Both the position numbers and the translations under genes were made by a program. Positions 8,585 to 57,371 of a stretch of 64,000 nt of DNA are shown here, piece by piece. How positions within the stretch are numbered: position 1 is the first letter of the stretch; each line of letters begins with the position of its first letter. The DNA is from Gekko japonicus (lineage: Eukaryota). The DNA lies in the NCBI RefSeq assembly GCF_001447785.1, contig NW_015175487.1:1-64000 (forward strand). The letters run 5' to 3'. The notes under the pieces were generated by a model. That model did not search any database and was not told the origin of the DNA. It saw only the letters and a program-made list of their open reading frames with translations.

Positions 8585-9517
8585 CTATTGAGAAAAGATC
8601 TTCTTTCTCAAAAGATGCCTCAGAGCTCTTTTAACGTCTTTATTTCTAAGACTGTAGATGTATGGATTGGACATTGGGGTGATAACAGTGTACATGAGAG
8701 CAAAAACGGCCCCGCGCTGGGCAGAGTAGGTGGAGGCAGGTTGGAAGTAGACCCCAATGATGGCCCCATAGAGGAGAACCACCATAGTGAGATGGGAGCC
8801 ACAGGTGGAGAACGCCTTGCGCCTCCCCGAGGAGAACTTCATCACAGTCACCACAATGCGGGCGTAAGTGAGAATAATGAAGAAAAAGGGACCAAGGATG
8901 ATGAGCCCACCCTCAAAAAAGATGGCCGCTTCATTGATGCTGGTGTCTGAGCAGGAGAGCTGGAGCAAAGGATCATGGTCGCAGAAGAAGTGGGACAGGT
9001 GGTTGTCCCCATGGTAACTGAGGCGCAGGAGGAGCCCAGCATGCAGCATGGAGTGGAGGGTGGAAACGATCCAGCACCCAGCCACCAAACGTCCACAGAC
9101 CTTCTGGCTCATCACCGTAGCATAGTGGAGTGGGTTGCAAATGGCGACATAGCGATCCAGAGCCATGACACTCACCATGAGGATGTCTGTGACACCAAAC
9201 ACATAGAAGAAGAAGAACTGAGCCATACAGGAAAAGAAAGGAATTGTCTTGGAAGAGGACATGAGGTGAACCAGCATCTGAGGCACCGTGACTGTGAGGA
9301 AGCCCACGTCCACCACAGAGAGGCTCCGCAGCAAGAAGTACATGGGGGTCTGAAGCCGGGCATCCACGGTGATTAGAATGACCATCATGATGTTGCCCAG
9401 AAGGCCTGCCCCATACATCAGCAGAAAAGAGGCGAAGAAGAGAGGCTGTTCTTCGGGTTGTGAGGAGAACCCCAGAAGAACAAACTCCACAACATCCATG
9501 CCATTCTCACAGTCCAT
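8585..9517 (-). CDS. OR1B1: Olfactory receptor, OR1B1-like paralogue A (310 aa)
   Basis: Intact OR ORF. PMYFLLRSLSVVD, AQFFFFYVFGVTD, VMALDRYVAIC, HFFCDH and NEAAIFFEGG resemble recalled OR1B1. Acceptor ttctccctgcag lies 5 nt before the ATG. Confidence 0.95.
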   Translation of the reverse strand: MDCENGMDVVEFVLLGFSSQPEEQPLFFASFLLMYGAGLLGNIMMVILITVDARLQTPMYFLLRSLSVVDVGFLTVTVPQMLVHLMSSSKTIPFFSCMAQFFFFYVFGVTDILMVSVMALDRYVAICNPLHYATVMSQKVCGRLVAGCWIVSTLHSMLHAGLLLRLSYHGDNHLSHFFCDHDPLLQLSCSDTSINEAAIFFEGGLIILGPFFFIILTYARIVVTVMKFSSGRRKAFSTCGSHLTMVVLLYGAIIGVYFQPASTYSAQRGAVFALMYTVITPMSNPYIYSLRNKDVKRALRHLLRKKIFSQ

Positions 9518-22432: not shown

Positions 22433-22492
22433 ATGGAGCAGGTAATGAAAGCCGAGCGCTGGAGAACACGTGGAGGCAAAAAACGTGAGGTG
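22433..22492 (+). CDS. Candidate first coding exon of the uncharacterised multi-exon gene (MEQ or MEQVMKAERWRTRGGKKREV)
   Basis: ATG at 22433 in a CpG-containing unique stretch. Two phase-0 donors (gtaatg at 22442, gtgagg at 22493) both fit the phase-0 exon at 24804. Confidence 0.35.
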
Positions 22493-22659
22493 GTGAGGAA
22501 GGTGGAAAGAAAGAATCGAAAGAAGCGGCATCAGAACTATGGCCTGGGGCCACCTCCAGCCCCAAGAACCATTTTTTGCCCCCCCAGGAGCCCCCAGCCT
22601 TGTTCCTCCTCTTTACTGGAGTTTCACCTCAGCCTGAAATCCCATGAGCCTTCCTCCCA

Positions 22660-23765
22660 GATGGATATAAGATGTAAATATTAATCAAATATACAAAAAA
22701 ATACATGCATTATTACAAAATCATTTAAAAGAAGAAGAAGAGAAGAGATTGGATTTATACCCCGCCCTTCACTACCCAAAGGAGTCTCAGAGCGGCTTAC
22801 AACCTCCTTTCCCTTCCCCTCCCCACAACAGACACCCTGTGGGGTAGGCGGGGCTGAGAGAGCTCTGACAGAGACTGCTCTTTTTCAAGAACAGCTGCGC
22901 CAGAACTACGGCTTGCCCAAGGTCATCCAGCAGCTGCAAGTGGAGGAGTGGGGAATCAAACCCGGTTCTCCCAGATTAGAGTCCGCATGCTTAACCACTA
23001 CACCAAACTGGTGTATATTTACAGCCCCAAATATAGTCTCAGTGCAGATTAAAATCATAGTGTTATCTCAAGTATAGACCATAAGTGACCCTGACCAAAC
23101 ACATTTCAGTCTTATGGCCTCCTTCAGTGGTCTCGAGCATAGTTATTATACATTGGCTCCAGACATGGCAATAATATTACAACAATTACTCAGTATATTC
23201 AGGACCAAGTTGAAGTTGTTCTGGAGAAAAAAATGAAGGGGAAAGATGGGTTTCAGTCTTAAGTTTGGTGCAATATTTATAATATAATCATGAAATGAAA
23301 ATCTGTTCAAAAATATCATTTTGAATTACTTCTGATCAAAGTCCATGACTCAAGACGGAGGTATAATTAAGAATAAATGAGGCTTCTTAATTATATCTCT
23401 GTCTTGAGTCATGGACATTGATTAGAAGTATTCATTTATTTATTTATTTTGGGGATTCTTATTCTGCCCTCCCCAGACAGGTTCAGGGCGGATCACAACA
23501 AATAGAGTCAAAGACGCGTTACAATAAAATCACATTAAAGTCATAAATACAATGAACAATAAAATTGGTAGCAGCAATATAATTCTGTTGGGGCCACAAG
23601 GTGGAATCAGATGGTCAGGGTCGCATATGGTCTACGTTTGAGATGACTGTATGGTTTTCATCTGTATTGAGGCTATATTTGGGCCTGTAATTGCCTTTAA
23701 ATCATTTTGTAATAAATACATGCTTTTTTGGTATATTTGATAAATATTTATGTCTTATATTCTGT
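22660..23765. mobile_element. Penelope-like relic with inverted arms and central hairpin, interrupted by a SINE (22730-23012) and an L2-like tail
   Basis: 22660-23100 is inverted against 23615-23765. Hairpin at 23327-23430. Degenerate hammerhead-like motif on - at about 23093-23131. Confidence 0.5.
22730..23012 (-). mobile_element. tRNA-derived SINE (Squam3-like)
   Basis: Full family sequence in reverse. Confidence 0.85.
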
Positions 23766-23970
23766 TCTAATACTGGGCCCTTTAATTTGGATACATGTAA
23801 CCTTCTAGGTTCTTAATTCATTCATTTTAGGTTACGTTTTCTCTTCCCCCTTTTTTTGTCCCCCCCCACGGACCCCCCCCCCAATGCTGTTTTGATCACT
23901 GCAAGCCCTCTCAGGAGGAGGGTGAACAGCCAACCCCCATCCTCCCGGCTGCTACAACCCTCTCACTTTA

Positions 23971-24358
23971 TAGGGTTGCCAGGTCCCCCCGGGGGGGGGG
24001 GCAGGGAAAACCCTGCTCGATGGGTCCATTACCTGCCGGCCCGGATCGGGCCACCGGGGGGAACCCCACCCCCAAAGTGCCGGGATCACGGAGACGTGCC
24101 TAGTGTGATGACATCATCTGGAGGTGACATCATCCATCATCACGCCGGGCACATTGCGGGGGGCACTCTATCTTTCGAGGGAAAACTCTATGGTTCTCCC
24201 TCGAATGATAGTGGTCCTGCCCCCAACGTGCCCAACGTGATGACGTCACTTCCGGGTGACGACATCACGCTGGACACATCTCCGTGCGTGCATTAAAGAA
24301 CTCCTGGAGAGGGCCAGGACTCCCCCTGCTGCAGCCAAGGTAGGACTTGGCAACCATA
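23971..24358. mobile_element. hAT-type MITE (TAGGGTTGCCA TIR)
   Basis: TIRs and 8-bp TSD TCACTTTA. Confidence 0.85.
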
Positions 24359-24803
24359 TCACTTTAGGACAGCTGTGAAGAAACCACGGGGCACACCTGG
24401 CACCCATCCTGGCTCAACCCTCCAAATGATCTTTGAATATGGTCTTTGGATCAGAAGGATTGGATGCCCCTGAGTTGCAGGAACACTGGCGAATCTTTCC
24501 CAGATCTGGTCCCTAGAGAAAACTCAAGGCAATCTAGCAGGAAAAGCCAGGTGCACCTTCGGGGGGGAGGGGTTTGGAGGTGAAGGGTGGCTAGAAGCAA
24601 AAATCCTGTTCCCTGTGCTATTGAGGGATAGCCTGTCCTGTGCTAAAGGGAGATGGTGCAGGTCTAGTGGGCATTTGCCAGTTGTGGGGGCCCGGCAAAG
24701 AGCCCTTTGAATGATCCAACTGCACCATATTTCCCTCAATTCTTGATGGCTACGCAGTGCAATTCTGAAAGTGAGGCTGAGTCTCTGCTCTGAAATCCTG
24801 CAG

Positions 24804-24882
24804 GGAAATAAGAAGAAGCTGCCTCTACGACAAAGAGTGTGGAGGGCAATCTTCGCCAAGAAAATATATAACATGCCAGAAG
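24804..24882 (+). CDS. Coding exon (GNKKKLPLRQRVWRAIFAKKIYNMPE) of the uncharacterised gene
   Basis: cctgcag acceptor and AAG|gtaggt donor. 79 nt, phase 0 to 1, joining in frame to the exon at 28126. Confidence 0.55.
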
Positions 24883-26122
24883 GTAGGTGTGTTGGAGGAG
24901 AAGATGAAGAAGAGTTGGTCTTTATACCACGCTTTACCCTAAGGAGTTCCAAAGCAACTTACAGTCGCCTTCCCTTCCTCTCCCCACAACAAGCACCTTG
25001 TGGAGGTAGGTGGGGCTGAGAGAGTTCTGAGAGAACTGGGACTGTCCCAAGGTCACCCAGCAGGCTTCATGTGGAGGAGGGGTGGGGAATCAAACCCAAT
25101 CCTCCAGATTAGAGTCTGCCACTCATACCACTGTACCACACCGGGAGAGGGGTGAAAACTTCAGGTGGGACAAGAGAACTTGGGGAATTACAACTGAACT
25201 CCATCCACAGACATCAGTTCCCTTGGAATTTCCCAACTCAGAGGTGGCAACCCTAGGGAAACACTCTGGGTATGGCTTCGTGTCCACACTCAGAGCCCTT
25301 CAGACTGCACTTTCTGGGGGCATATTTCAGCAACTAAGCCCATATTTTCTGGAATCCAGATGCCAAGATGATCTTTGCTTTTTCTTTGCTATTTCCCCCG
25401 TTTATCTGGTGAATGGAAGTTTTCACAAAATCTGCTTTTCATTATTGACAAAACACAAGAATAAAATGGCAGTGAAAACCAGCTGTGCTCTCAGGTTAAG
25501 TTCTTTCTATTTCTATCAGAACTTGCTGTTCCAAATGTGGAAACAGCTTCTGGGGTTCCTCTGCGGAACTCAGAGTTTACTTGCTCTTCGTTTTTGAGAG
25601 AGAGAGAAAACATTCNNNNNNNNNNNNNNNNNNNNNNNNNNNNNNNNNNNNNNNNNNNNNATCCCAGGTTTCCCAGACACATCTGCTTACAACAGAAATG
25701 CCGCTCGTGTGGGTCTTCACTCCTAAATTGTTTTCATTCTGTGTTATGGACCCTCTGGTGTCCACTTATGTCCTGGGTTTCTACTTTGTGACTCCAGCTC
25801 GGTCCTGATATTCCTTCTCTTTCTGATCATAAGGTAACTGCCTTATGGAACCCATTGACCACAGGTGTTGCGGCTGTTACTCTACCTTAGCTGGACTGAA
25901 AAGGAAGTGAGAAAAATGCACGGAAGGCCACCGATGCTCCCTCTAAGCTGTGGAGCCTTGTGCGCAAAATTCTACTTTGTGATCTGCTGGCATTAAAGTT
26001 GTGAGCAGGTGATTTGGCGACTGCATAAATTAGTTTGCTCTGGAGCCCTCCTTCCTGAGCGAAGACAAAAATATGTGAGCTTAAAAAACTTTGAGCTAGC
26101 TCACTCTAACTGAGCTTAGAGG

Positions 26123-26397
26123 TGAAGCGTAGTGAGTTAGACGCATGTATAAACCACTGAGACGGATGTAGTGATCAGCATGGTTTACTGGTACACAACA
26201 AAGACAACTACTGGCCGGCTGGCCAACTATATACACACCTGGGGACACACCCCTAGCTCCCATTGGTGGGTTTAAATCTCCCGCCACGGTCCTATTGGTT
26301 CCCAAGTGGAGAAACTAGGAGCCTAGTCCCCATTGTTCCCCCTGAGTCAAGCTCGGGGGTATTCGCTGGCCCCTGGTGGCCGTCAGCGGACATAACA
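26123..26397 (-). mobile_element. Solo LTR inserted in the right TIR of a hAT MITE (25931-26409)
   Basis: TG...CA ends and TSD GAGG. Homologous to 49109-49386. Confidence 0.75.
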
Positions 26398-26422
26398 GAG
26401 GGAACACTGCGCTCCACCAATC

Positions 26423-27593
26423 TGTATCATTGAAAAGTATGCAGACGGAGAGTGATTTCAGCAAAGCGTACTTTATTCAATCAGGAACAAGACGACTTTG
26501 GCCAGCTCGCAGGCCAGCTTATATTCCCTCAGAACCCACCACCCAAAACACCCCCCCACTTCCCGATAGGTTATTTACAGTGGCCGAGAGTCCCATTGGC
26601 TTCTCGGCCAGGAACCTAGCCCTCTGATTGGGGCAGGCTAGGATCCACCTGGTCCATTGTCTCTAGGAGCGAAGCTTGAGGTTTGTCTCTGGACAAGTCT
26701 GGACATGTCCGGACTTGATACACTACAATCATCCATCAGTGGACCTTCTAAGTTCGGAGGCAGCAGATCTCCAAGCACCAATTCACGGGGGGGACGGACG
26801 AGGGGGGACACTTCACGCCTTGTTTGTGGGTTTCCCAGATGTGTCCAGTTACAAACTGGATGACATATTGGGTTCCTGTAGGAACTCAAAATGGCGCCAA
26901 TAAGTGCATGAGGCAGAAATGGTGATGCTGAAGGGAAGCAGGGGCTGGAGGGAGGTGGGAAAGAGGGAAGAGGGGGGAGGGAAAGAGGGGACAAGCAGGG
27001 GAAAGGAAGGGCAGGAGGGGAAACTGGCCACAGGAGGAGGGCCCTTTGAGGGACCAGATTCTCTCTCAAATCCTGGCACATCTCCCTCTTGGATCTCCTG
27101 AAGAGGCAGAGGTAACCCCATCGTAAGCCATCAAGGGGCTTCATCTCCAGATCCGGCACAATCCAGACCTGGGCCTCCCTCAGCAGAGAGACCGTATGGG
27201 ACAAGTGGATTCAGTTGAACAATGGGGGGGGGATACGAAAGAGCCCTAGGGAGCAGCTAGGGGGCATCCCCCAGTCAGGTGTTTCTGGTCTCTGCCCCCC
27301 AACCCCTTACAGCTTCCTCCGATACCCCTCCTGGCTGTCCAGGTTCTCTGTTCCAGAAGGCCCACACCTTGCTGTGGCAGACTTTTTTTTTTACAGATAT
27401 ATATATATATACAGTTACATTCCAGAAGTTAAAGACTAGTATAAAGATTCCAGGTATGGAGATAAAACACTTCCAAAACGCTTCTAAATGAAACGTTTCC
27501 AAATAAAACATTTCCAAAGGTTAGAAGCTAGTATAGAAATAACACTTGCATCTAACCGCCAAACAATTTCTGTGACCTGAGTATCACCTTACA
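26423..27593 (-). mobile_element. Probable long LTR-derived element
   Basis: TGTA...TACA ends, with minus-strand TATA-like and AATAAA signals near 26470-26525. TSD is not clean. Confidence 0.45.
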
Positions 27594-27625
27594 AAACCTG
27601 GCTACTTGATGAGTGATCTTGGGAT

Positions 27626-27831
27626 CAGTGTTCCCTCTAAGCTGAGTCAGTGTGAGCTAGCTCAGAGTTTTTTAGCCTCCGGCTCACACATTTTTGTCTT
27701 AGCTCAGGAAGGAGGGCTCCAGAGCAAACTAATCTATGCAGTAGCCAAATCGGTCGCTCACAACTTTAATGCCAGTGGCTCACGAAGTAGAATTTTTGCC
27801 CACAAGATTCCACAACTTAGAGGGAACATTA
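27626..27831. mobile_element. hAT-type MITE
   Basis: Family TIRs and TSD CTTGGGAT. Confidence 0.85.
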
Positions 27832-28125
27832 CTTGGGATGTTTGTCGATTAGGAGAAATTCAAGTTTGGTTTTTTTCTGGCAGACCTGAATTTTTTCCCA
27901 TCAGAGGGGTGATAATCTCTCTACGTGCCACCTCCTAGTGTGGGCATTTGAAGAACATATGTTCTATAGTCTCTGTCTCCCTAAGTGGGCAGATACAAAG
28001 CCTTTCTGCATAAGGAATGTTCTTATATTTCCCATCAAGTACAGCAGAAGGGAGGGGCAGTGCGTCTAGCTAAGGAAAAGGCTCTTCTGAGGACTTATTG
28101 TTTGTGTTGTTATTGTCACCCACAG

Positions 28126-29511
28126 CCAACCAGGAGTCAGTGGTGGCTGCGCTGGAGGAGGACCAGGAGAAGGAGGAGGAGGTGGGGACCGGCCACAAGG
28201 AAGGTCATCTAACCCAAAGCCATCAACCTGGAAACGAGAACCTTCTGTCCAAGCCGAACCTGGCCACAGATGCGATACCCGTTTCCTTAGCGAACCAAAA
28301 CCTTTCAGCTGACCTTCAACGGTCAATTCTCCACAGCATCAAGCAGATATTTGATGAGGAACTGGAGAGGAGTGCCACTCCCCCAGTTTGCTTGGTTGAA
28401 AGGCAGAATGTCAGCTCTCTCTTCACTCCTTTGCGTCCCGTCAAGCAGTCTCCCTGCACACAAGACCAGCCCGTTTTGGAAATGCTTCTTAGGAAAAACA
28501 CAAGTTATGAAAGAAATCTCCAGATCCGCACCCATCACACCAGAAGAACCATCATCAATGAAATCTACCAAATTATCATTGCAGAGGTGGAGAATTTTCC
28601 ACATTCTTTCTTCCTTCAAGGAACATTCCCAACTTCTGGAATTGAGGAATTCCGAATGCTAGAGCGAGCTGCCACGAATGTCCAGGAACACCTGCCCCAA
28701 CCAGCGATCAAGAGAAGTAACGTGCTGCGGGTGTCAGAAGGTTGGATTCAGGTTGTGCTTGAAGATTTGAGTATTGCTCTCGCAGGTGCTGAGAGAACCC
28801 ATGGGGCATTTTCCCACCTAGTCCACTCTGGCTTTGGTGTCGTTGAAAAGATAGTGCAGATTCTTGGCCATACTGGTGGAATTCTGACCGAGGCACAGTT
28901 TAGGGACCATGTCGTAGATCTAGGCATGGGCAAATGCCAAATCCACAGCCAGACTAAAACTCCAGACGATTTGGCTGCTAGACAGCTTTCAAGCTTGGAA
29001 GACTCTTCCCCTGAAGGGATCACCAAATACCTCGTCAACAATGTTTCCATCAGGCTGATGGCGTTCACCAAAAATAAATTGGACTCTGTTTGGACACTTC
29101 TTGGACGCCATCTTCCAGTTCCTGACATCCATCCTGCCGAAACTAACATCAGGTGGTGCTCTGAAAAACTAATACATACCATCCTGGAACTTGTTCAACG
29201 AGACCTAGAACTGGAGGTGACCTCTGCCCCAAATATTCTTCCTTGTGAAGAGTACACAAATATTAAGGAAACTGTAAAGGGTCTCTGCCAGATCTTGACT
29301 TGCCAAATAGCTAGAACAAAAACAGATATCCAGAAAAGAGCAGTAGAGAAGATCTTTCGGAGGCATCTTTTGGAGCAGAATGGAACTTTGCCATTGATGG
29401 CAAGCACGGAAGAGATCTTAAACCAGGTCACCTTGCATTCTTGGCCATCCATTGTAGAGAATCTTTGCTGTCCTCCAAAGGACACAGTGTCAAGCCTTCC
29501 AGCTAACAGAG
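28126..29511 (+). CDS. Large 1386-nt coding exon (about 462 aa, helical) of the uncharacterised gene
   Basis: Lies within the 491-codon ORF 28098-29573. Bounded by cccacag| and AGAG|gtgagt, phase 1 to 1. Non-repetitive, with no TE motifs that I can recognise. Confidence 0.8.
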
Positions 29512-30490
29512 GTGAGTCTGAGGAGCATGTGCTGCCCCAACCCAGGCTGACTCTGCAGCCAAATTCCAGCTAAAGATCACTCAGTTTGGCATAAATGTCA
29601 AATACCTCCTGAAGTGTGAGATGTGGGGTCCAAATGTGCAGGTGGTGACCAGAGATTGGTCTTCTTCTGCAGTGTTGTGTGTGTTGTGGAATATCCTCTG
29701 CAGTTAAATCAGCTGTGTGCTGCCTCTGAGGTTGTGATCAGAGGGGCAGTTCAATCCGCTGTTGCCCCGCCTTGAATTAAGCCAGGTTATATTGTGGCAG
29801 AGAATCCTGACCAGACTTACCCCTTTTAGCACACTTCAATGTGCTTTTACCCCTCCTTGCATGACCAGACGGCAGGAGTCAGCCTGTCGGCCATTTTTTC
29901 AAAAGTGTGTCCTTTGAGCATGCCCAAAAGCACTGATGAGCATGCTGGGATATGGAGTTCATGGGGCTGTCGGCCATTTTATTTTTAAAGTTAGTCCACA
30001 GAGCAAGCGCACAAGCGGTGAAGAACGGCTGGGATATGCTCACTGCCGTCCTCCCTCTAATCTTTTCAATTTACCCCTTCTCCAAACAATATTAAAAAGC
30101 TGCAGAACAGGGGTGTCTGTCTTTGAGAATTTTTCAAAAGAAAATAAGGTTTTGAGCAGCCCCCGGGGGTGGGGAGAGGTGCGTATATACAGTCATGCGA
30201 TCCTTGCTAACTGGGGGGGGTGGCTGGGAAACAAGAGATCAGTGATACCTGCCTGACTTGGGTGCGCAACAGAGTGACCAGACGACAGGAAATCCATTTT
30301 GGAAGCGGCTCAGACCAACAGGACCGGACTTCCTCAGGTATCACTGAAACACGGGGCAAGGGGAGGGAGGAATGGAACTCAGATGACTGGGGCGCAACGG
30401 ACAGATGGTGCTGTCTGATTGTGTGCTTTAAATCCATAAGGGAACAGCAACGGATCAAATTGGCTGTCTGATCAAGACCTGAGGCTCCGA

Positions 30491-30986
30491 TACTTTTTCT
30501 TGTTTCCAAGCTTGAGCATAAGTCATTCTAGCCAGTACCAATGGTTTGGGAATGGATTAAGAAGTTACTTTTTACAGTAGAGATGGACAAACTCACAAGG
30601 AAACTGAACAATAAACATTCTGAAGAATTCTTTGCAGATTGGTTAGATTTTAAAGAATATTTAGAGAAGGATTGGGACGTGAAGAATAATTTGTTTTCTT
30701 TAGAGAATTATTAAGGATAGAGTATATAAACTCCGAGATAAAGAAAAGTTTAAAAATTCATATATTGAACTATAGGTTACCGGTATATAAATGTGTGCTT
30801 TGTTTGTTTTTGTTAGAGATAAGAAGATCAAGAAGAAATGATAAAGGGAGGGGGTGGGAGCACTGCGGGAAGCCCGAGGAAGAAGGGGAGAGGGGAAGGG
30901 AAAAGGGATATGTATTAATTTTAATATTATGATGTTGAACGTGTTGTAATATCCCTCTAATAAAAAATGTTTAAAAAAAAAAAAAA
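30491..30986 (+). mobile_element. 5'-truncated L1 with 5' inversion, poly(A) and TSD
   Basis: TSD AAGACCTGAGGCTCCG, AATAAA plus A-tail, and an ORF2 C-terminal peptide. Confidence 0.85.
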
Positions 30987-31771
30987 AGACCTGAGGCTCC
31001 GGGTGGGGCCATTCCTGCTTCTACTGTTTTTAATCATGCAGGATTCTTTTATGGTTTTCTTCTGTTTCTCCTGACAGGTTTCTTTTGCATTTCTCATTTT
31101 GATTTCCATACACTGACATAACTTTATGGATTTGTGATGACTTTTGTGGGCCCTTTAACTCCTGCCCTTTGACTCACACCACTGCCAAGGAGGAGCCTTA
31201 CAGTTCAGAGGCCCACAGTTCCCGCCTCCCAGTAGGAGCAGCAGAGGGTGGGGCCTGCAATCAGACCGAACCCCCCCCAGCAAACAGACCTTGCTCAATG
31301 AGCACCTGACCAGACAAAAGGCCCAAAGACAAAAACACCACTCTCCAGCAAGCGATAAGCCCCCACTTGCCCTCAAACTCTGTCCTCTCACAAAGCAACC
31401 TCAAGTAATGTTCCCCAGTGGTTTAGCGGTTTAGGAAAGGCAAAAAAGCCACAACCCCTCATCTCCTGGGTTCTTTCTCCCAGCCCAGCTGGGTCAGTTC
31501 TGCTTAGGAGGAGCCTTAAAGTTCAGAGGCCCACAGCCTCCACCACCCAGAAATAAGCCCTGGGCAAACAGACCTGGATTTCATGGATTTGTGAGCCGTC
31601 TTGTTGACTGTGTGAGCAGAAGAAAAAAAGAGAGTTGTGCCCAGCAGGGCTCCTTCCTGGGTTGCCGTCACTTGGCTCCAAGGTCATGTGCTGCAAAAGT
31701 GCCGTGGCATAAGGAGGGGGGGGGTGTCTTGGGCAGCAAATCTGACATGGGCATGCCCTGTGCAATTTCAG

Positions 31772-34700
31772 GGACGGAGGAGAACAAGGACAATGGCCGA
31801 TGGGAGGACACTGCCCAGGGTACTGACTCAAAGGACCAAGGGTTAAGTGAGCAAAGCCACTGCGATTCCAAGGCTCCAAAGGTTGGCTCAGCTGAAGACA
31901 AAGGAGGTGCAGCAACCCCCTCGGTGAGCAGGCAAGTTAGTCAAGGGAGAATGCTGTTTGAAAGGATTGCTGAGGTGGGGAAAGGGCCTTATACTGGCGT
32001 GGGGAAAGATCCTGATCAGCCTCAGACTCTGGAGAACAACCGCCAGTCAGATCAGGTCTGATGGAGCTCAATGAACCAATGGCCCGGCCGAATAGAAAGC
32101 AGTTTCATTTGGCTACAGCAGGAGTCTCCAATACCATGCCTGTGGGTACCTTCCTTGGTACCTGCCAAGTGCTTTAGAAAATGGGCACGATAAACCTCAA
32201 TGGAGTGGACATCTGTTCCAGGCCCCTTTGCTTATTAAAATGAGATACCTCCTGGAGCATGAGAAGTTGCAGCTAAGAGATGGCCTTTCTTCCTCAGGTT
32301 CTGAAACAAATTGCTCCAGGCACCTCCTCTGCCCTCAACAGCAGCCAAATCGAGGCAACTTCACACACCGACCCACAACCTCCAGTGAAGACAGAGGGTG
32401 GTAATCTATTCTTCTTTCAAATATTGTTCCCCCCCCCTCGCTTCAGAAGCGCCATGCCATGAGGAGAGGGGGGTCTTGGGTAGCAAATCTGACATGGGCA
32501 TGCCCTGTGCAATTTCAGGGACGGAGGAGAACAAGGAAGATGGCCGACACGAGGACACTGCCCGGGATCGTGACCCAGAGGACCAAGGGGTAAACGAGCA
32601 AAGCCACTGCGACTCTAAGGCGTCAAAAGCTGACTCAGCTGAAGACGAAGAAGGTTCAGCAACCCCCTCGGTGAGTAGACAAGTGAGTCAAGGGAGGGAC
32701 TCCTCTTCCTGGATGTCCCTGCTCCTCAGGGGAGAGGAGAGGGTGGATTGAGACAAGACCTCTCCTGCCATTATTCGCAACCCCCGGAATGTCCTAGCAA
32801 GGGCGGTGGGTGTCCGACGGAAGGGCCAAGGGCAGGTGATGGCGGAGATGCTTCCCCGTCCTCCTCACTATCCACTGACGGCAGCCTCTATTGCATCCAG
32901 GGAAGGCTCTTTTGGGCTGGGAGGGAGGTGGGAGGTGGCGCCCAGCCCTGGCCAGGCAAAGGAGAGCTCCTGGAGAAGTGCCCCCAGGAATCCTGTTGCC
33001 CACGGGCTCCTCATTGGGGGATGCTGAATGAAAGGATTCCTGGGGCAGGGGAAAGCCCTGATCAGCCTCAGGCTCCGGAGAACAACAGCCAGTGCGGTGG
33101 AGCTCCATGAACCAAGGGCCTGGCTGAACAGAGCTACAGCAGGGGTCTCCAATATCGTGCCCATGGCCACCTTTCCTGGTCCTCACCAAGTGCCTTAGAA
33201 AACCACACTTTTAGCGGTTGGCTCTGCTGCCCCTTATGGCAGGTAGTCTGCAAGTCTTTTGCAAGCGGGAGGTCTGAAATCCAGCCCCCGGCCTCTCATA
33301 TAACTACAGTTAAAACTTAACATTTAGGGGCTGTGTGCTTCCACTCCCCTTCCTTTGGGTGTGTGTGTGAGAGAGAGTATTTTCTCTGTGTGTGCATGCT
33401 TATGGGCCTGGAAGTCATGGTGACTTCTGGTGACCCCCCAGGCAATATCAAGCCGCTTCCCTTCCTAACAGCACAAGTGACCAAACCCTCCTGCCTCTCT
33501 ATAGTTTTCTGCCTGACAACACACCCCTGTCCCCCAAGCATAGGTTCTTTATGAAGACGGGGGCCACAAGAGCCAGAATCTCCCTTCCAGTTTGGAGGAG
33601 AACGCTACACAGAGAGTGATTAAGCTGTGGAATTCACCACCAGAGAATGGCCACAGGAATAAGCAGCTGTAAAAGGAGATTAGATGGAGGATAAAGTCTA
33701 TCAATGGCTACTAGCCATTGTGGCTCAGGGGAACCTCCATGTTCAGAGGCACTCTGAATCCCAGAGACAGGGGGCAACATCAGGGGAATGCCTCGGCCTC
33801 TATGTCCTGTTGTTGGCTCTCCAGTGGAACTGGTTGACCACTGAGTGAGACAAGGTGGTAGACTAGATGGACCCTCACTGGTCTGATCCAGCAGAGTTCT
33901 GATGTTCTCAACACCATGGATGGGGGAAACTTCAGTCCTGGGCTCAAGAAGTTGGCTACCTCTGTTTCTGCTTATCAAAATGAAATACCTCCTGAAGCAT
34001 GAGAAGTTGCAGCTAAGAGATGGCCTTTCTTCCTCAGGTTCTGAAACAAATTGCTCCAGGCACCTCCTCTGCCCTCAACAGCAGCCAGATTGAGGCAACT
34101 TCACACACCGACCCACAACCTCCAGTGAAGACAGAGGGTGGTAATCTATTCTTCTTTCAAATATTGTTCCCCCCTCGCTGCAGAAGTGCTGTGGCCTGAG
34201 GGGGGTCTTGGGCAGCAAATTTGACATGGGCATGCCCTGTGCAATTTCAGGGACTGAGGAGAACAAGGAAGATGGCCGACAAGAAAATACTACCCGGAAT
34301 AGGGACTCAGAGGACCAAGGGGTAAACGAGCAAAGCCACTGCGACTCCGAGGCTCCAAAAGCTGACTCAGCTGAAGACGAAGAAGGTTCAGCAACCCCCT
34401 CGGTGAGTAGACAAGTTATTCAAGGGAGGGACTCTTCTCGCTGGATGTCTCTCCAGAAGAACTGGTTGGTCACTGTGTGAGACACGGGGATAGACTAGGT
34501 GGAACACTGGTCTGATCCTGCAGGGCTCTTCTGATGTTCTTAACATCATGGATGGGGAACTCTGGTCTCCGAAGAGCAAGGCTGTGGGAAACTTCAGTCC
34601 TGGGCTCAAGAAGTTGGCTACCACTCTTTCTGCTGAAGCTTGGAATTGACAGACCGTACCATCTACAATCCATTGCATTTCCATGCTTTCCTGGTTATCC

Positions 34701-35902
34701 TTCAGTCTCAGGACCTGATGCCTGCTGATTTTAAACATGAAACACCTATAGAAATGATAATTGGGCACAGCCTTTGTGGAAAAGGCTTCTTTGTGGAAAA
34801 GGCTTCTTAAATCTCAATGAATGGAAGCCTGTTCCGGCCCCCTTTGCTTATCAAAATGAAATATTTCCTGTCCTGGAGCATGAGAAGCTACATCTAAGAG
34901 ATGGCCTTTCTTCCTCAGGTTCTGAAACAAATTGCTCCAGGCACCTCCTCTGCCCTCAACAGCAGCCAGATTGAGGCAACTTCACACACCGACCCACAAC
35001 CTCCAGTGAAGACAGAGGGTGGTAATCTATTCTTCTTTCAAATATTGTTCCCCCCTCGCTGCAGAAGTGCTGTGGCCTGAGGGGGGTCTTGGGCAGCAAA
35101 TTTGACATGGGCATGCCCTGTGCAATTTCAGGGACTGAGGAGAACAAGGAAGATGGCCGACAAGAAAATACTACCCGGAATAGGGACTCAGAGGACCAAG
35201 GGGTAAACGAGCAAAGCCACTGCGACTCCGAGGCTCCAAAAGCTGACTCAGCTGAAGACGAAGAAGGTTCAGCAACCCCCTCGGTGAGTAGACAAGTTAT
35301 TCAAGGGAGGGACTCTTCTCGCTGGATGTCTCTCCAGAAGAACTGGTTGGTCACTGTGTGAGACACGGGGATAGACTAGGTGGAACACTGGTCTGATCCT
35401 GCAGGGCTCTTCTGATGTTCTTAACATCATGGATGGGGAACTCTGGTCTCCGAAGAGCAAGGCTGTGGGAAACTTCAGTCCTGGGCTCAAGAAGTTGGCT
35501 ACCACTCTTTCTGCTGAAGCTTGGAATTGACAGACCGTACCATCTACAATCCATTGCATTTCCATGCTTTCCTGGTTATCCTTCAGTCTCAGGACCTGAT
35601 GCCTGCTGATTTTAAACATGAAACACCTATAGAAATGATAATTGGGCACAGCCTTTGTGGAAAAGGCTTCTTTGTGGAAAAGGCTTCTTAAATCTCAATG
35701 AATGGAAGCCTGTTCCGGCCCCCTTTGCTTATCAAAATGAAATATTTCCTGTCCTGGAGCATGAGAAGCTACATCTAAGAGATGGCCTTTCTTTCTCAGG
35801 TTCTGAAACAAATTGCTCCATGCACCTCCTCTGCCCTCAAAAGCAGCCAGATCGAGACGTCTTCACACACCGACCCACAACCTCCAGTGAAGACAGAGAG
35901 TG
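31772..35902 (+). CDS. Four tandem two-exon modules. Exon B (152 nt): 31772-31923, 32519-32670, 34251-34402, 35132-35283. Exon A (103 nt): 32298-32400, 34038-34140, 34919-35021, 35800-35902. Each module encodes 85 aa.
   Basis: All B copies are tttcag|GG...TCG|gtgag (phase 1 to 0). All A copies are ctcag|GTT...TG|gtaatc (phase 0 to 1). No stops or indels in the spliced frame. Confidence 0.7.
34012..35793 (+). repeat. Apparently identical 881-bp tandem duplication
   Basis: The ORF track gives identical translations offset by 881 (34208/35089, 34388/35269, 34534/35415). Confidence 0.9.
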
Positions 35903-36962
35903 GTAATCTATTCTTCTTTCAAATATTGTTCCCCCCCTCGCTCCAAGGAATGAGCCAGTTTCACTATAGAGTTTTTGCCCAAATACCAGAGCGTCGACCA
36001 GATGTCGGTGGTATGATGTCATCACTTCCCATGCGACACTGGCAACAAGGCCTAGGCCTTTCTCTTTCTCCTCATAAATTCCCCTCATCCCCCGCTGGTT
36101 CCCAGCAGGGACCTGGCAACCCTAGCCTGCTGCCTCCTGCCTGCCATCAGCTGGTGCCTTTCATCCCACTGCCCCTGGCCCACTAGTTCCCTGCTCCTAC
36201 TCTTGAGGAAGCCCTTCCACTCAAGGAGGCCTTTTCCCCCCCAGAGTCCTTTGCTCCACAGGGAGCCAGTACAGATGGGTAGGGTTGCCAGGTTCCTCGG
36301 AACGGCTGGCGGGGGATGAGAGGCAGACTTACTGGGAGCTGGGAGGAACACTGGGAATTAACACAACATACCTACGTGACCCGGAAGTGACATAAGCATG
36401 TCCAGAACATGGGGGGGGGGATGCTCTGGTTTGGGGGCAGAACTCTATGGTAGAATTAGCCTCTACCATAGAGTTTTGCCCAAAAACCAGAGTGTTGCCT
36501 CCTGATATCCCTGACATGCCTACGTCACTTCAGAGTCACATAGGCACGTCGTATTAATTTCTCGTGTTCCTTCCTTTTTTGTGTATGTGGGGGTAATCCT
36601 CCTCTTCTGGCCGGTTGGCCAGTGGCAGAGATGTGGGGGCTGGCAGCAGGAAAACCCCACCCCCACGGGGGGAGGGGGTCTGGCATCTCTACTGGTGGGC
36701 CTGCCTTCTGGCTGCTCCTCTCCTGCTGTGGCCGCCCCGCCTGGCTCTCTTCTCAGCTCTGCCCTCCTTAGAGCTGCACCCCCGCTCCACCCCTTCTCCC
36801 TCAGGTGTCGGGTACCATGGCACTGTGACACAACCTCAGACTGGGGGCCTGGTCCAGGCTTCCCTCTCCCACAACCCAAGAGATGCTGCCGGGAGACTGA
36901 AGGGGCAAAGGGGGCCGCTTCCATACTCCGGAGTCAGCACCATTCCTTTCTTGTTCCTGCAG

Positions 36963-37039
36963 AGCCCAAGAAGCCGAAGAAGAAGAGGTCCGTCTTCAGG
37001 AGGCTCTTCTGGTGCGGCAGCAAAAGGCAGAGGCCCTGA
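36963..37039 (+). CDS. Terminal coding exon (EPKKPKKKRSVFRRLFWCGSKRQRP*) of the uncharacterised gene
   Basis: Strong acceptor cattcctttcttgttcctgcag, phase 1, TGA at 37037-37039. AATAAA at about 37770 follows an AT-rich tract. Confidence 0.6.
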
Positions 37040-38367
37040 AAAGACCACCGTGCCTTTCTGCAGGAGTCAATGTCCCTCCTTGCCTGTCAGTCTCTATGGC
37101 ATGGTGCCAGCGCAGCAAGTTGGCAGCAAATAACGGATAGGCACGCTCCTTAGCAAGCTACCAGGGGAGGGGGACAGGTAGCGAACGCGTGGGAGCCTGC
37201 AGTGGCCCAGCCACAGCCATCATGAAGCACAGAGCATCAGGATCCAGGCAGGAAGGGAGGGCAGACACCTGTTGATTCCCAGGAAGGGGTGGCCTGGGCC
37301 ATGGGACTGCGGAGGGAGGGCCCCACAGTGCTCCACAGGGAACGCCCCTGCCCCACTGCAAGTTCCCTTTGCCAGGCAAGAGGAATGCAGAGCGGGACAC
37401 AGCAAAGGGAAGATGCAACTAAGCCAAAAAAAAAAAAAAACTGTCCCAAAATTGTCCAGTAGCTCATTAAGAAAAGGCAGGCATGAAAAGGGAGTCATGA
37501 GTTCGAGTCCCGTGAAGGGCCAAGTTGGCTAGCAGGCAACGATCCTAGCTGTGCTTATGCCCAGCAGCAAGCCTTATTATTATTGCAGTTTGTGGTTCTT
37601 CTTATTGTCTTTATATTTATCATTGGAGTTCTTATACATGTTATTAATTATTATTGATTGCTTCTTATTCTTATGATTATTAATATTAGAGTTTCTACAG
37701 TTTATAGCAATAATTATTATAGCACTTATTATTAAAGTTCTTATCCTCAATATTTGTATTATTTGGGTTAATAAAGTTGTTCTGAAACTGTGGCTGAATC
37801 TGCATTTGTCTTTCCCACCCGTGTCCCAGCCTTTTGACTCTGTCTTCAAAAAAGCTGTCTACATTTGGTGTCGTTTTCACACCTCAACAGTGCTAGCATA
37901 CTTTTGCACGTCCACATATGTTTATCGTCCTTTCAGGGCAGCTCCACCGTCATTGCACCTCCACACTGCTTTAAAAGAATCTTCTCCAAACAACATTCAA
38001 ACAAGCATAGAGAAAGACGGCGTCACAGCAGCACAAAACTGATTTAAAAATGCAAATACAGATTCGACCTAAATGAGAATGGATTAGGATAATCTGTACA
38101 ACCGCACAACTATTGTGAAACCAGGTTTCTTTTCTTCTGAAAGAAAAAAGGTTTTCCAGCCGTCTGCAAACACAGGTGTCCTTTGACTGCCATCCCTCAC
38201 GCAAACTCACTTGCTGAGCTTCAAGAGGCAGTGCTGAACCATGGCCTAGGCATATGGGAACGGGGCACAGAGGTGGCAGCAAAGGCCAGAGGTGGCCAAA
38301 GGCAGCAACTGTTCCAGGACAGGATATCAAGGGAGGAAGGGGAGAGACAGAGAGGAAGAGGAAGGCA

Positions 38368-39199: not shown

Positions 39200-40135
39200 T
39201 TAGTGAGAAAACGATATCCTACCCAAGAGGTTCCTCAGGGCCTTTTTGACGTCTTTATTCCTGAGACTGTAGATGTAGGGGTTGGACATGGGGGTGACAA
39301 TCGTGTACACGAGAGCAAAAATGGTCCCTCGTTGGGAAGAATAGCTGGACGTGGGTAGGAAGTAGACCCCAGTGACAGCACCGTAGAAGAGCAGCACCAT
39401 GGTAAGATGAGAGCTACACGTGGAGAAAGCTTTGCGCCTTCTTGCAGCAGAGAACTTTATCACAGCTGCCACGATGCGGACATAGGTGACGACGATGAAG
39501 GCAAAAGGCCCGAGGATGACGGGAACGCCCTCGAAGAAGATGGCCGCTTCGTTGGCGCTGGTGTCTGAGGAGGAGAGCTGGAGCAAGGGCTGGTGGTCGC
39601 AGAAGAAGTGGGACAGGTGGTTGTCCCCACAATAACTGAGGCGCAGGAGGAGGCCAGCATGCAGCATGGAGTGGAGGGTGGAAACGATCCAGCACCCAGC
39701 CACCAAACGTCCACAGACTTTCTGGCTCATCACCGTAGCATAGTGGAGCGGGTTGCAAATGGCGACATAGCGATCCAGAGCCATGACACTCACCATGAAG
39801 ATGTCTGTGACACCAAACACGTAGAAGAAGAAGAACTGAGCCATGCAGGAATAGAAAGGGATTGCCTTGGAAGAGGACAAGAGGTGAACCAGCATCTGAG
39901 GCACCGTGACTGTGAGGAAGCCCATGTCCACCACAGAAAGGCTCCGCAGCAAGAAGTACATGGGGGTCTGAAGCCGGGCATCCACGGTGATCAGAAGGAC
40001 CATCACGATGTTGCCCAGGAGGCCTGCCCCATACATCAGCAGAAAAGAGGCGAAGAAGAAAGGCTTTTCTTTGGGTTGTGAGGAGAACCCCAGAAGCACA
40101 AACTCCGCAACATCCGTGCCATTCTCACAGTCCAT
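39200..40135 (-). CDS. OR1B1: Olfactory receptor, OR1B1-like paralogue B (311 aa)
   Basis: Close paralogue of 8585-9517. Start placed at 40135 (MDCENG) because the in-frame ATG at 40156 lies upstream of the acceptor ttctctccgcag. Confidence 0.95.
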   Translation of the reverse strand: MDCENGTDVAEFVLLGFSSQPKEKPFFFASFLLMYGAGLLGNIVMVLLITVDARLQTPMYFLLRSLSVVDMGFLTVTVPQMLVHLLSSSKAIPFYSCMAQFFFFYVFGVTDIFMVSVMALDRYVAICNPLHYATVMSQKVCGRLVAGCWIVSTLHSMLHAGLLLRLSYCGDNHLSHFFCDHQPLLQLSSSDTSANEAAIFFEGVPVILGPFAFIVVTYVRIVAAVIKFSAARRRKAFSTCSSHLTMVLLFYGAVTGVYFLPTSSYSSQRGTIFALVYTIVTPMSNPYIYSLRNKDVKKALRNLLGRISFSH

Positions 40136-40289
40136 GGGACCTGCGGAGAGAATCATAGTTGGAGACCGTCAGAAGGAACCAGAAGGTCTGACAGATACAA
40201 CTTTCTACCATAAAGTAGGCCCATCTTGAACTGAAAGGTTGGGAAATGTTTACATTGGGATCTTAAAGCCTAAGAGCTTTGTGCTTGAA

Positions 40290-42089: not shown

Positions 42090-42560
42090 GGATTGAAGGG
42101 TGACATGACAGAGGTTTACCACGTTCTGCATGGGATAGAGAAAGAAGAACTTTTCTCCCTGTCTCGCACTACAAGAACTCGTGGGCACACCATGAAATTG
42201 ATGAGCAGGAGGCTTAGAAGAGGTCAAAGGAAGCACTTCTTCACCCAAGGAGTCATTGACATGTGGAATTCACTGCTGCAGGAAGTGGTGGCCACAAGCA
42301 CAGACAGCTTCAAGAGGGGACTGGATAAACATAGGGAGCAGAGATTAGCCAGAAGGTATAGATGGAACACTCTGTCTGGGGCAGGGATGCTCTGTACTCT
42401 TGGTGCTTGAGGGGGGGGCAACAGTGGGAGGGCTTCTGGAGCTCTGGCTCTGCTGGGGGACCTCCTGATGGCCCCTGGGTTTTGGCCACTGTATGACACA
42501 CAGTGTTGGACTGTATGGGCCATGGGCCTGATCCAGCGTGGCTTCTCTGATGTTCTTAGG
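42090..42560 (+). mobile_element. CR1 LINE 3' fragment
   Basis: Peptide RTRGHTMKL...KHFFTQGVIDMWNSL and a gatgttctta tail. Confidence 0.8.
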
Positions 42561-50358: not shown

Positions 50359-50850
50359 GTTGGCCCTCCAGAGGAACTGGTTGGCCACTGTGTGAGACAG
50401 GAGGCTGGACTAGAGGGACCCTCCCTGGCCTGATCCAGCAGGGCTCTCTTGATGTTGTTCTCAGGGGAAGGCCTTGGCCTCCCTGCCCTGTTCCTGGCCC
50501 TCAAGAGGAACTGGTTGGTGCCTGTGTGAGACGGGAGGCTGGACCAGATGGACCCTCCCTGGTCTGATCCAGCAGGGCACTTCTGATATTCTTATGGCCT
50601 CAGCCTCCCTGCCAGAACCGACAGCTCTCTGAAACTCCTGGCCCAGAAGAGCCCGCTTCGACAGCCGCCCAGTGACTTTACGACTGGTCTGACCCAGCAG
50701 GGCTCTTCTGATGTTCTTCTCAGGGGAAGGCCTCGGCCTCTCTGCCCTGTTGTTGGCCCTGCAGAAGAACTGGTTGGCCCCTGTGTGAAGCAGGAGGCTG
50801 GACTGGATGGACTATCGGTCTGATCCATCTGGTTTCTTCTGATGTTCTTA
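50359..50850 (+). repeat. Tandem array of CR1 3'-UTR-derived units next to a gap
   Basis: About four copies of ...ctgatccagcagggctcttctgatgttctt. Confidence 0.65.
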
Positions 50851-52319
50851 TCAGGACGACAAAGAGCTGGCTATTATATATATAGAACAGAAACCCAGAC
50901 AGATGGGCTGATGTTAATTCACTCAGAAGCCTGAAAAAAGACACTCAGGTCTCGACCACAAAAACACTTCACCGTTTGGTGTTGGCAGCTTTTGGAACAG
51001 TTTCCACCGCAACCGTCGAAAACCTTTGAGGCTCTTGGAATGGAAGCAAGACGATTTGGGAAAGTGGAGCCAGGGGGACCCCTAGTGGCCGCTGCCGGGA
51101 GCGCTGCAATACAGGAGAAAGCAGGAGATAAAAAACTTCCTTTTGAAATTGGATGATCTGGCCTCTGGAGCTCTGCAGATATTCCGCCCTTTCAGCAATT
51201 ACTTGCTGCCAAGAGGTCATATGCCTCGGCCATGGAACCCCGGCTCGTTGCAAGGCATTCTGTGATACACACCGTGCACGGTTGATAACTAATGTGTAAC
51301 CCACTAAGGTCCTAATATCTATAGGGAGAGTGGGCAGGTTCAGTTCGTTTTGACAGCGGAACTCCCACCTATGGTTATTAAGAATATGTAAGTGCTGTTA
51401 CTACACATGTACTTAAACACATAAATAAAAAAGGCAATACAAATAATGCACTTTAACATTTAAAATAAACTCTTTATATAAACAAAGCATGGAGGTTTTC
51501 ATATAAATCCTCATTCACTTCTGGTTGGTTGCTATTACTTCATAGCAATGAATCTTCAGGATATTACTGAGTACAGATATCTTCAGCATCCACAAGGATG
51601 CACAGAACAGAAAAAATACTAAGCACATAAATAATGCATATATTGTAGGTCCATATGTTGTAAGCTCACAGATACTGGAACAGCATATGAGGTTTCCAGG
51701 CTGTACTTGGGATGCTGCAGCTCTTCTCAGTTGACTCCAGGATTTACCTGCAATAATTCAAGGCAGGCCTTAACACAGCAAAGTCTATATAGGCCTCTCC
51801 CCAAGATGTTGCCTCTTTCTGGGCCAGGCTGAACTGCTGGCTGCTTTAGCAAACAGAATACTAAGGAAGATGTTTAAAAGGATCAATAACTATAAAATTA
51901 CATATTTTCAGAATCATATGAAATTACTATTAAGTATCTTAATAGTCCCAAACCAACATTTCAAACTCCCCAAGATATAACTTCACTTTTGTTTGAAAGA
52001 ATCTGTAATAATTACATTGGTTAACAGCATTTACCTGCAATAATTCATGGCAGGCCTTAACACAGCAAAGTCTATATAGGCCTCTCCCCAAGATGTCGCC
52101 TCTTTCTGGGCCAGGCTAAATTGCTGGCTGCTGGGAATACCCAGCCTCCTTTAGGGAAGGCTACAAGCACTGAGCATGCTCATTAACTAAGTATAGAAGG
52201 GGGGAAAGGGAGTTAATTGCCACACCACCTATTGCCAAAAGCAGGCGTGCCTGATCCCTGTATGCTGTTAACAGCTACAAAACTGCATGGGTTACATCTG
52301 GATGAAGCCTGGAGACAAA

Positions 52320-57260: not shown

Positions 57261-57371
57261 ACCTAAGGAGACTTTCTCCAACATTAGTGGCTGTTCTGTT
57301 GGAAGGCGAGCTATTTACGTTGGAGGAAGCCTCCTTAGGCTGGAAGAAGGGTATTTGAGGATGGTTGGGTC

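What the first reader, a model, noticed from the sequence alone, without database searches (positions are those of the whole stretch)
22433..37775. Unrecognised multi-exon protein-coding gene embedded in the OR cluster
Seen: eleven GT-AG exons (24804-24882, 28126-29511, 4 x [152+103 nt], 36963-37039) splice with matching phases into one 2562-nt frame, i.e. 853 aa plus stop, not counting a first exon. The ORF track shows only pieces of this. The protein reads as a basic amphipathic N-terminus, a helical domain of about 460 aa, four 85-aa acidic/Ser-rich repeats and a polybasic tail. I do not recognise the family. Inference: a fast-evolving, possibly lineage-specific scaffold gene lying between two OR1B1-like paralogues.
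Basis: partly seen in the sequence, partly recalled or inferred. Interest (0 to 1): 0.85.

Follow-up and report, generated by a model that had tools for sequence, protein, structure and literature searches.

The report
FSIP2-derived chimeric gene candidate in gecko
The large exon is not from an unknown family: it is a strongly diverged copy of one internal piece of the giant sperm-tail gene FSIP2, kept readable by selection inside a gecko olfactory-receptor cluster and probably spliced to unrelated small exons, but no RNA evidence could be obtained.

Summary
All eleven listed exons have AG/GT borders, are open in the required frame, and close phase to 853 codons plus TGA. The N gap (25616-25660) lies in the intron between exons 24804-24882 and 28126-29511, so no frame crosses it.

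The family is recognisable. The 1386-nt exon matches only squamate FSIP2 (fibrous sheath-interacting protein 2) giants, at E 6e-48 to 2e-32, around residues 1611-2001 of Lacerta FSIP2. Identity is about 27-34%, against 44-57% among FSIP2 orthologues. No other part of the window resembles FSIP2.

A tree puts the exon inside squamate FSIP2, next to the gecko FSIP2 clade, on a branch about five times longer. Neutral decay to that divergence would leave about 5-14 stops, and there are none. Conserved FSIP2 sites are kept preferentially. So this exon is, or until recently was, under coding selection.

The 152+103-nt cassettes are plausible exons but show no clear constraint (dN/dS 0.45-0.77). Two of the four are a 100% identical 881-bp duplication. 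The first and last exons rest on splice signals only.

No annotated protein contains this exon. The scan had already noted the cassette on this same stretch (s1-816690), not on other DNA.

The parts
22433..22441 (+).
   Evidence: Sequence only. There is no support beyond ATG plus a GT donor; speculative.
23970..24360 (.). CpG-richer palindromic element with a perfect CRE (TGACGTCA, 24241-24248), about 450-800 nt upstream of exon A; a possible promoter or simply a mobile element
   Evidence: CpG o/e 0.62-0.66 at 24000-24400. Internal inverted arms 24087-24286. Sequence read. A promoter role is inference only.
24804..24882 (+). Exon A, 79 nt, basic peptide; holds the only in-frame ATG of the model's 5' part (24873, A at -3)
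   Evidence: AG/GT borders and open frame. With a crude home-made splice score it is the only phase-compatible open candidate this good in the 7 kb upstream of exon B. No homology support.
25616..25660 (.). Assembly gap (N) inside intron A-B
   Evidence: Not filled and not looked up. No exon or frame crosses it.
28126..29511 (+). Exon B, 1386 nt: diverged copy of an internal segment of FSIP2 (about residues 1611-2001 of Lacerta agilis FSIP2)
   Evidence: HMMER E 6e-48 to 2e-32 against five squamate FSIP2 giants. tblastn homology spans 28191-29504. 491-codon ORF. Neutral simulation and site-retention tests.
31772..31923 (+). Cassette exon C1 (152 nt, acidic)
32298..32400 (+). Cassette exon D1 (103 nt, Ser/Thr/Pro-rich)
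32519..32670 (+). Cassette exon C2
34038..34140 (+). Cassette exon D2
34251..34402 (+). Cassette exon C3
34919..35021 (+). Cassette exon D3 (identical to D2)
35132..35283 (+). Cassette exon C4 (identical to C3)
35800..35902 (+). Cassette exon D4 (93% identical to D1-D3)
34013..35774 (+). Two 100% identical tandem copies of an 881-bp unit (D exon, short intron, C exon, long intron)
   Evidence: no difference between p and p+881 for p = 34013-34912.
36963..37039 (+). Last exon, 77 nt, polybasic peptide (11 K/R in 24), TGA stop
   Evidence: Strong acceptor (score 5.9, top 1%).. No homology support.
37731..37775 (+). Poly(A) signals ATTAAA (37731) and AATAAA (37770), about 700 nt after the stop

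Best explanation
This is a partial paralogue of FSIP2 in the gecko lineage. A piece of about 1.3 kb from the middle of FSIP2's long coding region was copied into an OR1B1-like olfactory-receptor cluster. It has been kept as a 462-codon exon by selection for coding capacity while evolving about five times faster than FSIP2 itself. (That the parent region is one giant exon is general knowledge of the human gene and was not checked for geckos.) Shown: the homology, the intact frame, the preferential retention of conserved FSIP2 sites, and good flanking splice signals. Inferred: the exon is spliced to unrelated exons to give a chimeric protein of about 853 aa. These are a short basic 5' exon, three or four copies of an acidic Ser/Thr-rich two-exon cassette (152+103 nt = 85 codons, frame-neutral, so copy number can change or be skipped without breaking the frame), and a polybasic last exon. 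Inferred from the parent gene only: it is expressed in male germ cells, and its FSIP2-type helical module lets it join or modulate the sperm fibrous sheath through the partners of that FSIP2 segment, with the charged repeats and tail as fast-evolving appendages.
For: Exon B hits only squamate FSIP2, at E 6e-48 to 2e-32. Homology covers 28191-29504, almost exactly the exon, and is found nowhere else in the window. The tree puts it inside squamate FSIP2 (100/100 against mammals) and sister to the gecko FSIP2 clade (92/92). Neutral simulation gives a mean of 4.7 stops already at 80% aa identity (3 of 300 runs stop-free) and 0 of 300 stop-free at 70% or less; the observed identity is about 34% with no stop. 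There are 8 indel events relative to Gekko kuhli FSIP2, and the frame is intact. The exon keeps 52-54% of conserved FSIP2 sites against 15-24% of variable ones (Fisher p = 5e-4), a profile like that of mammalian FSIP2. Phases, AG/GT borders and the absence of stop codons at junctions are confirmed. Splice scores of A, B and the last exon lie in the top 1-7% of all AG/GT sites in the region. The cassette exons have no indels, while the short intron between them has three. Poly(A) signals follow the stop. There is no poly(A) tract at the end of the homology, so this is not a classical retrocopy.
Against: No annotated protein in the collection contains exon B, although this contig's OR proteins are in it. 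Annotated proteomes that are in the collection (Gekko kuhli, Paroedura, Eublepharis, Heteronotia, Sphaerodactylus) show no orthologue either. Cassette dN/dS of 0.45-0.77 cannot be told from neutral with these counts. Exon A, the last exon and the first exon have no homology support. The structure model is poor (pLDDT 42.7). Pfam's FSIP2 domain is not present. The sperm role is borrowed from the parent gene and was not tested.
Confidence: 0.5

Rival explanations
1. Exon B is a real coding exon of an FSIP2-derived gene, but the transcript differs substantially from the reader's chain. For example, translation could start at the ATG at 24873 or in another upstream exon. The reading frame could simply run on past 29511 to the stop at 29571-29573. 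Or the cassette exons and the last exon could be non-coding or belong to another transcript.
For: The ORF continues 20 codons beyond the donor to a stop. Only exon B shows selection. The cassettes' substitution rate equals that of the adjacent short intron (0.84 against 0.80, and 0.91 against 0.90). The D-exon donors are weak (score 0.6). B can also splice in frame directly to the last exon.
Against: The donor at 29511 is the best in the region (7.4), and FSIP2 homology stops right at it. The cassette exons are open in one frame only, indel-free, and phase-closed with B and the last exon.
Confidence: 0.27
2. It is a dead relic: an unexpressed FSIP2 fragment that lost function recently, or a recent neutral copy of part of an undiscovered, already diverged FSIP2-like paralogue. 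The neighbouring 'exons' would then be chance AG...GT open stretches multiplied by tandem duplication.
For: No annotation and no RNA record. The cassettes look neutral. Short open AG...GT segments are common. Geckos do carry extra FSIP2 copies.
Against: 462 codons are stop-free and frame-intact at about 34% identity, which neutral drift does not give. Site-specific retention is seen. No closer FSIP2-like source protein exists among 1.84 billion representatives. Strong splice signals sit exactly at the edges of the homology.
Confidence: 0.18

Closest known systems
FSIP2 (fibrous sheath-interacting protein 2), the parent gene
   Same: Exon B aligns over about 390-450 residues with the central region of squamate FSIP2: Lacerta 1611-2001, Gekko kuhli 1645-2094, Phrynocephalus 989-1432. 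It keeps about half of the positions that are invariant in squamate FSIP2. The helix-rich prediction fits.
   Different: It covers only about 7% of FSIP2's length. It lacks the Pfam PF15783 domain, which lies far downstream in FSIP2 (3017-3574 of P0002). It sits at a different locus, in an OR cluster, has about 27-34% identity and a five-fold longer branch, and is flanked by exons with no FSIP2 similarity.
FSIP2L (FSIP2-like) of mammals: protein-coding in mouse, dog, cat, pig and horse; unitary pseudogene FSIP2LP in human (PMC9825485)
   Same: It is a second, smaller FSIP2-related gene beside the giant parent, so the kind 'extra FSIP2-derived gene' is known. The mouse Fsip2l promoter is CRE/CREB1-driven and silenced by methylation (PMC9729108). 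A CRE lies upstream here too, but inside a repeat-like element.
   Different: The tree places the window's exon within squamate FSIP2, so it arose independently of any mammalian duplicate. No mammalian protein reached E 0.001 with exon B as query. FSIP2L sequences themselves were not compared here.
Chimeric new genes made by partial duplication plus recruitment of local exons (general class, from textbook knowledge)
   Same: A fragment of a testis gene lands in a new locus, gains splice sites at its edges, is joined to unrelated exons, and evolves fast.
   Different: Expression and function are not shown here. The mechanism of the copy (DNA-level or RNA-level) cannot be read from the decayed flanks; there is only no poly(A) tract.

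Membership tests
FSIP2 family (homology) | Significant sequence similarity to FSIP2 proteins | tested here: met
   E 6e-48 to 2e-32 against five FSIP2 representatives and no other hit among 1.84 billion. tblastn 138-183 bits.
FSIP2 family (homology) | Pfam PF15783 FSIP2 domain | tested here: not met
   No PF15783 hit at E up to 1. In FSIP2 the domain lies elsewhere (P0002 3017-3574).
FSIP2 family (homology) | Giant protein (about 4,500-7,000 aa) | tested here: not met
   The ORF is bounded at 28098 and 29573. There is no FSIP2 similarity in the flanks. The model is 853 aa.
FSIP2 family (function) | Testis expression, fibrous-sheath location, AKAP4 binding | not testable with these tools
No vertebrate partner sequences are available for complex prediction. 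The paper that maps the AKAP4 sites is not held.
Mammalian FSIP2L | Orthology to FSIP2L | tested here: inconclusive
   The tree puts the exon inside squamate FSIP2 (100/100), which argues for an independent origin. FSIP2L sequences were not in the data set.
Intact protein-coding multi-exon gene | Open frame through all exons with matching phases and canonical splice sites | tested here: met
   (exon by exon; not joined).
Intact protein-coding multi-exon gene | Purifying selection on the coding sequence | tested here: inconclusive
   Met for exon B. Cassettes: dN/dS 0.45-0.77 with few changes. No test is possible for exon A or the last exon.
Intact protein-coding multi-exon gene | Spliced transcripts | not testable with these tools
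No holder run is on record as RNA.
Intact protein-coding multi-exon gene | Orthologues in related species | not testable with these tools
No annotated orthologue exists in the protein collections.
Processed retrocopy | Parent's 3' end and a poly(A) tract | tested here: not met
   It is an internal fragment only, with no A-run after the end of the homology.

The most novel reading that the evidence does not exclude
This is a functional, lineage-specific 'mini-FSIP2'. Selection would have isolated one module of about 460 aa from the 6,000-7,000-aa sperm fibrous-sheath giant as an autonomous unit. That unit would be fused to a newly born, still-expanding acidic repeat cassette (the latest copy is 100% identical) and a polybasic tail, so this would be gene birth caught in progress. 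It would also be a natural pointer to a self-sufficient functional segment of FSIP2.
Probability: 0.2. Interest if true: 0.6.

Novelty: new variant of a known kind. Interest (0 to 1): 0.4.

Why it matters
FSIP2 is a major fibrous-sheath protein, and its loss causes human sperm-flagellum malformation and infertility (reviewed in PMC11276731). Its size has hindered functional dissection. If the gecko copy is expressed, it would mark one internal module as able to work on its own. It would also be a clean example of a new chimeric gene assembled from a fragment of a reproductive gene plus a frame-neutral exon cassette that grows by tandem duplication. In practical terms it is a gene model missing from the annotation. 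If it is not expressed, it is an ordinary gene relic.

Tried and rejected
- **RNA and DNA reads.** Rfam and local BLAST were run on the pieces beside them.
- **Joined product.** All searches were done exon by exon and by reference.
- **Direct family searches on exon B.** Pfam gave only a chance-level hit. PDB sequences gave nothing. The ESM Atlas gave no usable hit. The search for homologous proteins at 270-859 aa gave nothing.
- **Structure.** The AlphaFold2 model built with 16 FSIP2 rows was too poor (pLDDT 42.7) for a fold search, so none was run.
- **Small exons against FSIP2.** Only chance-level short matches were found.
- **Other ORFs in the region, both strands.** No Pfam family. No Rfam family.
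- **A D-type exon before C1 or a C-type exon after D4.** Homology stops about 75 nt before C1 and about 40 nt after D4.
- **Age of the duplication.** The AU test does not reject a split before the squamate crown (p = 0.069), so 'gecko-specific' is preferred but not proven.
- **AKAP-like docking helices in the module.** This was considered only from memory. No Pfam AKAP or RII-binding hit supports it, so it was dropped.
- **Position of the AKAP4-binding sites in FSIP2.** The source paper is not held.
Full report
**Observation.**
- Exon A (24804-24882) is preceded by cctgcag and followed by gtaggt.
- Exon B (28126-29511) is preceded by cacccacag and followed by gtgagt.
- The four 152-nt exons (31772, 32519, 34251, 35132) and the four 103-nt exons (32298, 34038, 34919, 35800) all keep the same acceptor and donor contexts.
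- The last exon (36963-37039) has a strong pyrimidine tract and ends in TGA.
- Each piece is open in the frame the phases require, and none of the split codons is a stop. The pieces add up to 853 codons plus the stop.

I checked this exon by exon.

**The assembly gap.** The gap at 25616-25660 lies in the 3.2-kb intron between A and B. No exon or frame runs through it, so the model does not depend on what it hides. An exon inside it cannot be excluded, and I did not try to fill it.

**What the large exon is.** Pfam, PDB sequences and the ESM Atlas gave nothing. An exhaustive HMMER search of 1.84 billion representative proteins returned exactly five hits, all giant proteins of 2,314-6,098 aa, at E 6e-48 to 2e-32. 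Four of them are FSIP2 or FSIP2-domain proteins of Gekko kuhli, Phrynocephalus, Lacerta agilis and Varanus; the fifth has no name.
- The match covers almost the whole exon (28191-29504) and an internal segment of FSIP2, about residues 1611-2001 of the 6,098-aa Lacerta protein.
- No other part of the 64-kb window resembles FSIP2, even at permissive thresholds.
- Pfam's FSIP2 domain lies far downstream in the parent protein and is not part of the copy.
- The small exons have no FSIP2 similarity.
- No poly(A) tract follows the end of the homology.

So this is an isolated internal fragment of FSIP2, not a retrocopy of its 3' end and not FSIP2 itself.

**How diverged and how old.** In this segment, squamate FSIP2 orthologues are 44-57% identical to one another. 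The window's exon is 27-33% identical to each of them in pairwise BLAST, and about 34% over aligned columns. Mammalian FSIP2 is 24-28% identical to Lacerta.
- In a maximum-likelihood tree of 31 sequences, the exon falls inside squamate FSIP2 (100/100 against mammals) and is sister to the gecko FSIP2 clade (92/92). Its terminal branch is 1.67 changes per site, against about 0.15-0.3 for the gecko orthologues.
- An AU test does not reject a position outside the squamate crown (p = 0.069).
- A gecko-lineage origin with roughly five-fold acceleration is therefore the preferred reading, but an older origin remains possible.

**Is it a coding exon under selection?** Several results say yes.
- I evolved the exon's own DNA neutrally in silico. 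This gave a mean of 4.7 stop codons at 80% residual amino-acid identity, with 3 of 300 runs stop-free. At 70% or lower, no run in 300 was stop-free. The real exon is at about 34% identity with no stop.
- It differs from Gekko kuhli FSIP2 by eight indel events, and the frame is intact.
- It keeps 52% of the positions that are invariant among squamate FSIP2 but only 15% of the most variable ones. This profile is almost the same as that of mammalian FSIP2, 58% and 20%.
- Among sites where the three gecko FSIP2 proteins agree, it keeps 54% where other squamates also agree and 24% where they do not (Fisher p = 5e-4). One caveat applies to this last test: changes on the gecko stem could contribute to the difference.

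Together these results show that the exon was maintained as protein-coding for most of its history. They cannot exclude a very recent loss of function.

**The rest of the model.**
- **Splice signals.** I used a crude splice score of my own (approximate consensus weights, not a trained model). Acceptor and donor of A, the donor of B and the acceptor of the last exon are in the top 1-3% of all AG/GT sites between 20.8 and 38 kb. A is the only open, phase-compatible candidate of that quality in the 7 kb upstream of B. The D-exon donors are weak.
- **Cassette array.** The array runs C1-D1-C2-D2-C3-D3-C4-D4. Homology ends about 75 nt before C1 and about 40 nt after D4.
- **Cassette exons versus introns.** The exons have no indels, while the short D-to-C intron has three small ones. 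Nucleotide identity in the exons, however, equals that of this intron.
- **Cassette selection.** dN/dS between copies is 0.45-0.77 from 20-34 changes, which cannot be told from neutrality.
- **Copy number.** Positions 34013-34893 and 34894-35774 are 100% identical. The gene therefore has three old cassettes plus one exact copy, which is either very recent or an assembly effect.
- **Frame neutrality.** Because 152+103 nt is 85 codons, and B can also join the last exon in frame, cassette number can vary by duplication or skipping without breaking the frame.
- **Ends of the transcript.** Poly(A) signals lie at 37731 and 37770. Upstream, the only in-frame ATG of exon A is at 24873.
- **Possible promoter.** A CpG-richer palindromic element with a perfect CRE lies at 23970-24360. 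It looks like a repeat element, and a promoter role is speculation.

**Annotation and expression.** The flanking OR at 39200-40156 is found in the protein collection as the window's own annotated protein, and so is the OR at 8585-9517. Both sit on a 120,920-nt contig. The best named relatives are 'olfactory receptor 1B1-like' of geckos at 82-86%. So the genome's annotation is in the collection, yet no protein containing exon B exists there, in this genome or in any other annotated squamate.

The exon's DNA is present in several runs of the same organism, and about 5% of its words are in a second organism. None of the holder runs is on record as RNA.

Expression, junctions and orthologues therefore remain untested.

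**Function.** FSIP2 is a major, testis-specific fibrous-sheath protein that binds AKAP4, and its loss disorganises the sheath (PMC11276731).
- The most likely reading (inference) is that the copy is a germ-cell-expressed small protein. Its FSIP2-type helical module would let it enter or modulate the fibrous sheath.
- The acidic Ser/Thr-rich repeats (11-17 acidic residues per 50-aa C exon, several S/T-x-x-D/E sites) and the polybasic tail (11 K/R in 24) would be fast-evolving additions.
- The structure prediction is helix-rich (57%) but of low confidence (mean pLDDT 42.7), so I ran no fold search.

**Comparison and novelty.** Extra FSIP2-derived genes are known in mammals (FSIP2L; PMC9825485). 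Geckos themselves carry two full-size FSIP2 paralogues. The new elements here are the architecture (one FSIP2 module plus unrelated exons and a growing cassette), the locus, and the lack of annotation. I file it as a new variant of a known kind and not as a new family.

An earlier first-stage note of this scan (s1-816690) described the cassette on this same stretch; my checks agree with it. Another report (s1-824284) calls this genome the Japanese gecko, which fits the OR hits but was not verified here.

Noticed in passing
window 34013-35774: An exact (100%) tandem duplication of an 881-bp unit holding one D exon, one C exon and their introns. It is either a very recent duplication or an assembly artefact, and it changes the repeat count of the protein from 3 to 4.
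   Followed up: partly
P0018, P0019 (Paroedura picta) and P0001 (Gekko kuhli): Geckos seem to have two full-size FSIP2 paralogues. Paroedura has 'FSIP2' and 'FSIP2-like' on one contig. The Gekko kuhli protein groups with the 'like' copy (100/100), so that duplication predates the Gekko-Paroedura split.
   Followed up: partly
P0003 residues 1327-1710 versus 1660-2008: The FSIP2 segment homologous to exon B also aligns weakly (21-23%, E about 1e-7) with the stretch about 330 residues upstream in several squamate FSIP2 proteins, and with a stretch about 350 residues downstream in the mammalian ones. This suggests degenerate tandem modules inside FSIP2.
   Followed up: no
window 23970-24360: A CpG-richer palindromic element (inverted arms 24087-24286; outer ends GGTTGCCAGGTCC / GGACTTGGCAACC) carrying a perfect CRE, TGACGTCA, at 24241-24248. 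It looks like a MITE-type repeat and could act as a promoter for the gene downstream.
   Followed up: no
window 34451-34545; also 57169-57262, 50366-50459, 50500-50594, 50759-50853, 42482-42558: A dispersed repeat of about 95 nt (74-82% identity) sits in the long cassette introns and at several other places in the window. It explains the variable intron lengths.
   Followed up: no
window 3535-4473 (+), 8585-9517 (-), 39200-40156 (-), 57830-58768 (-): Four intact single-exon olfactory receptor ORFs. The two that flank the finding are 84% identical to each other and are OR1B1-like. The annotated product of the one at 39200-40156 is 311 aa, that is, it starts at the second ATG.
   Followed up: partly
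They lie in the intron between exon B and C1 and were left out of all later searches.
   Followed up: no
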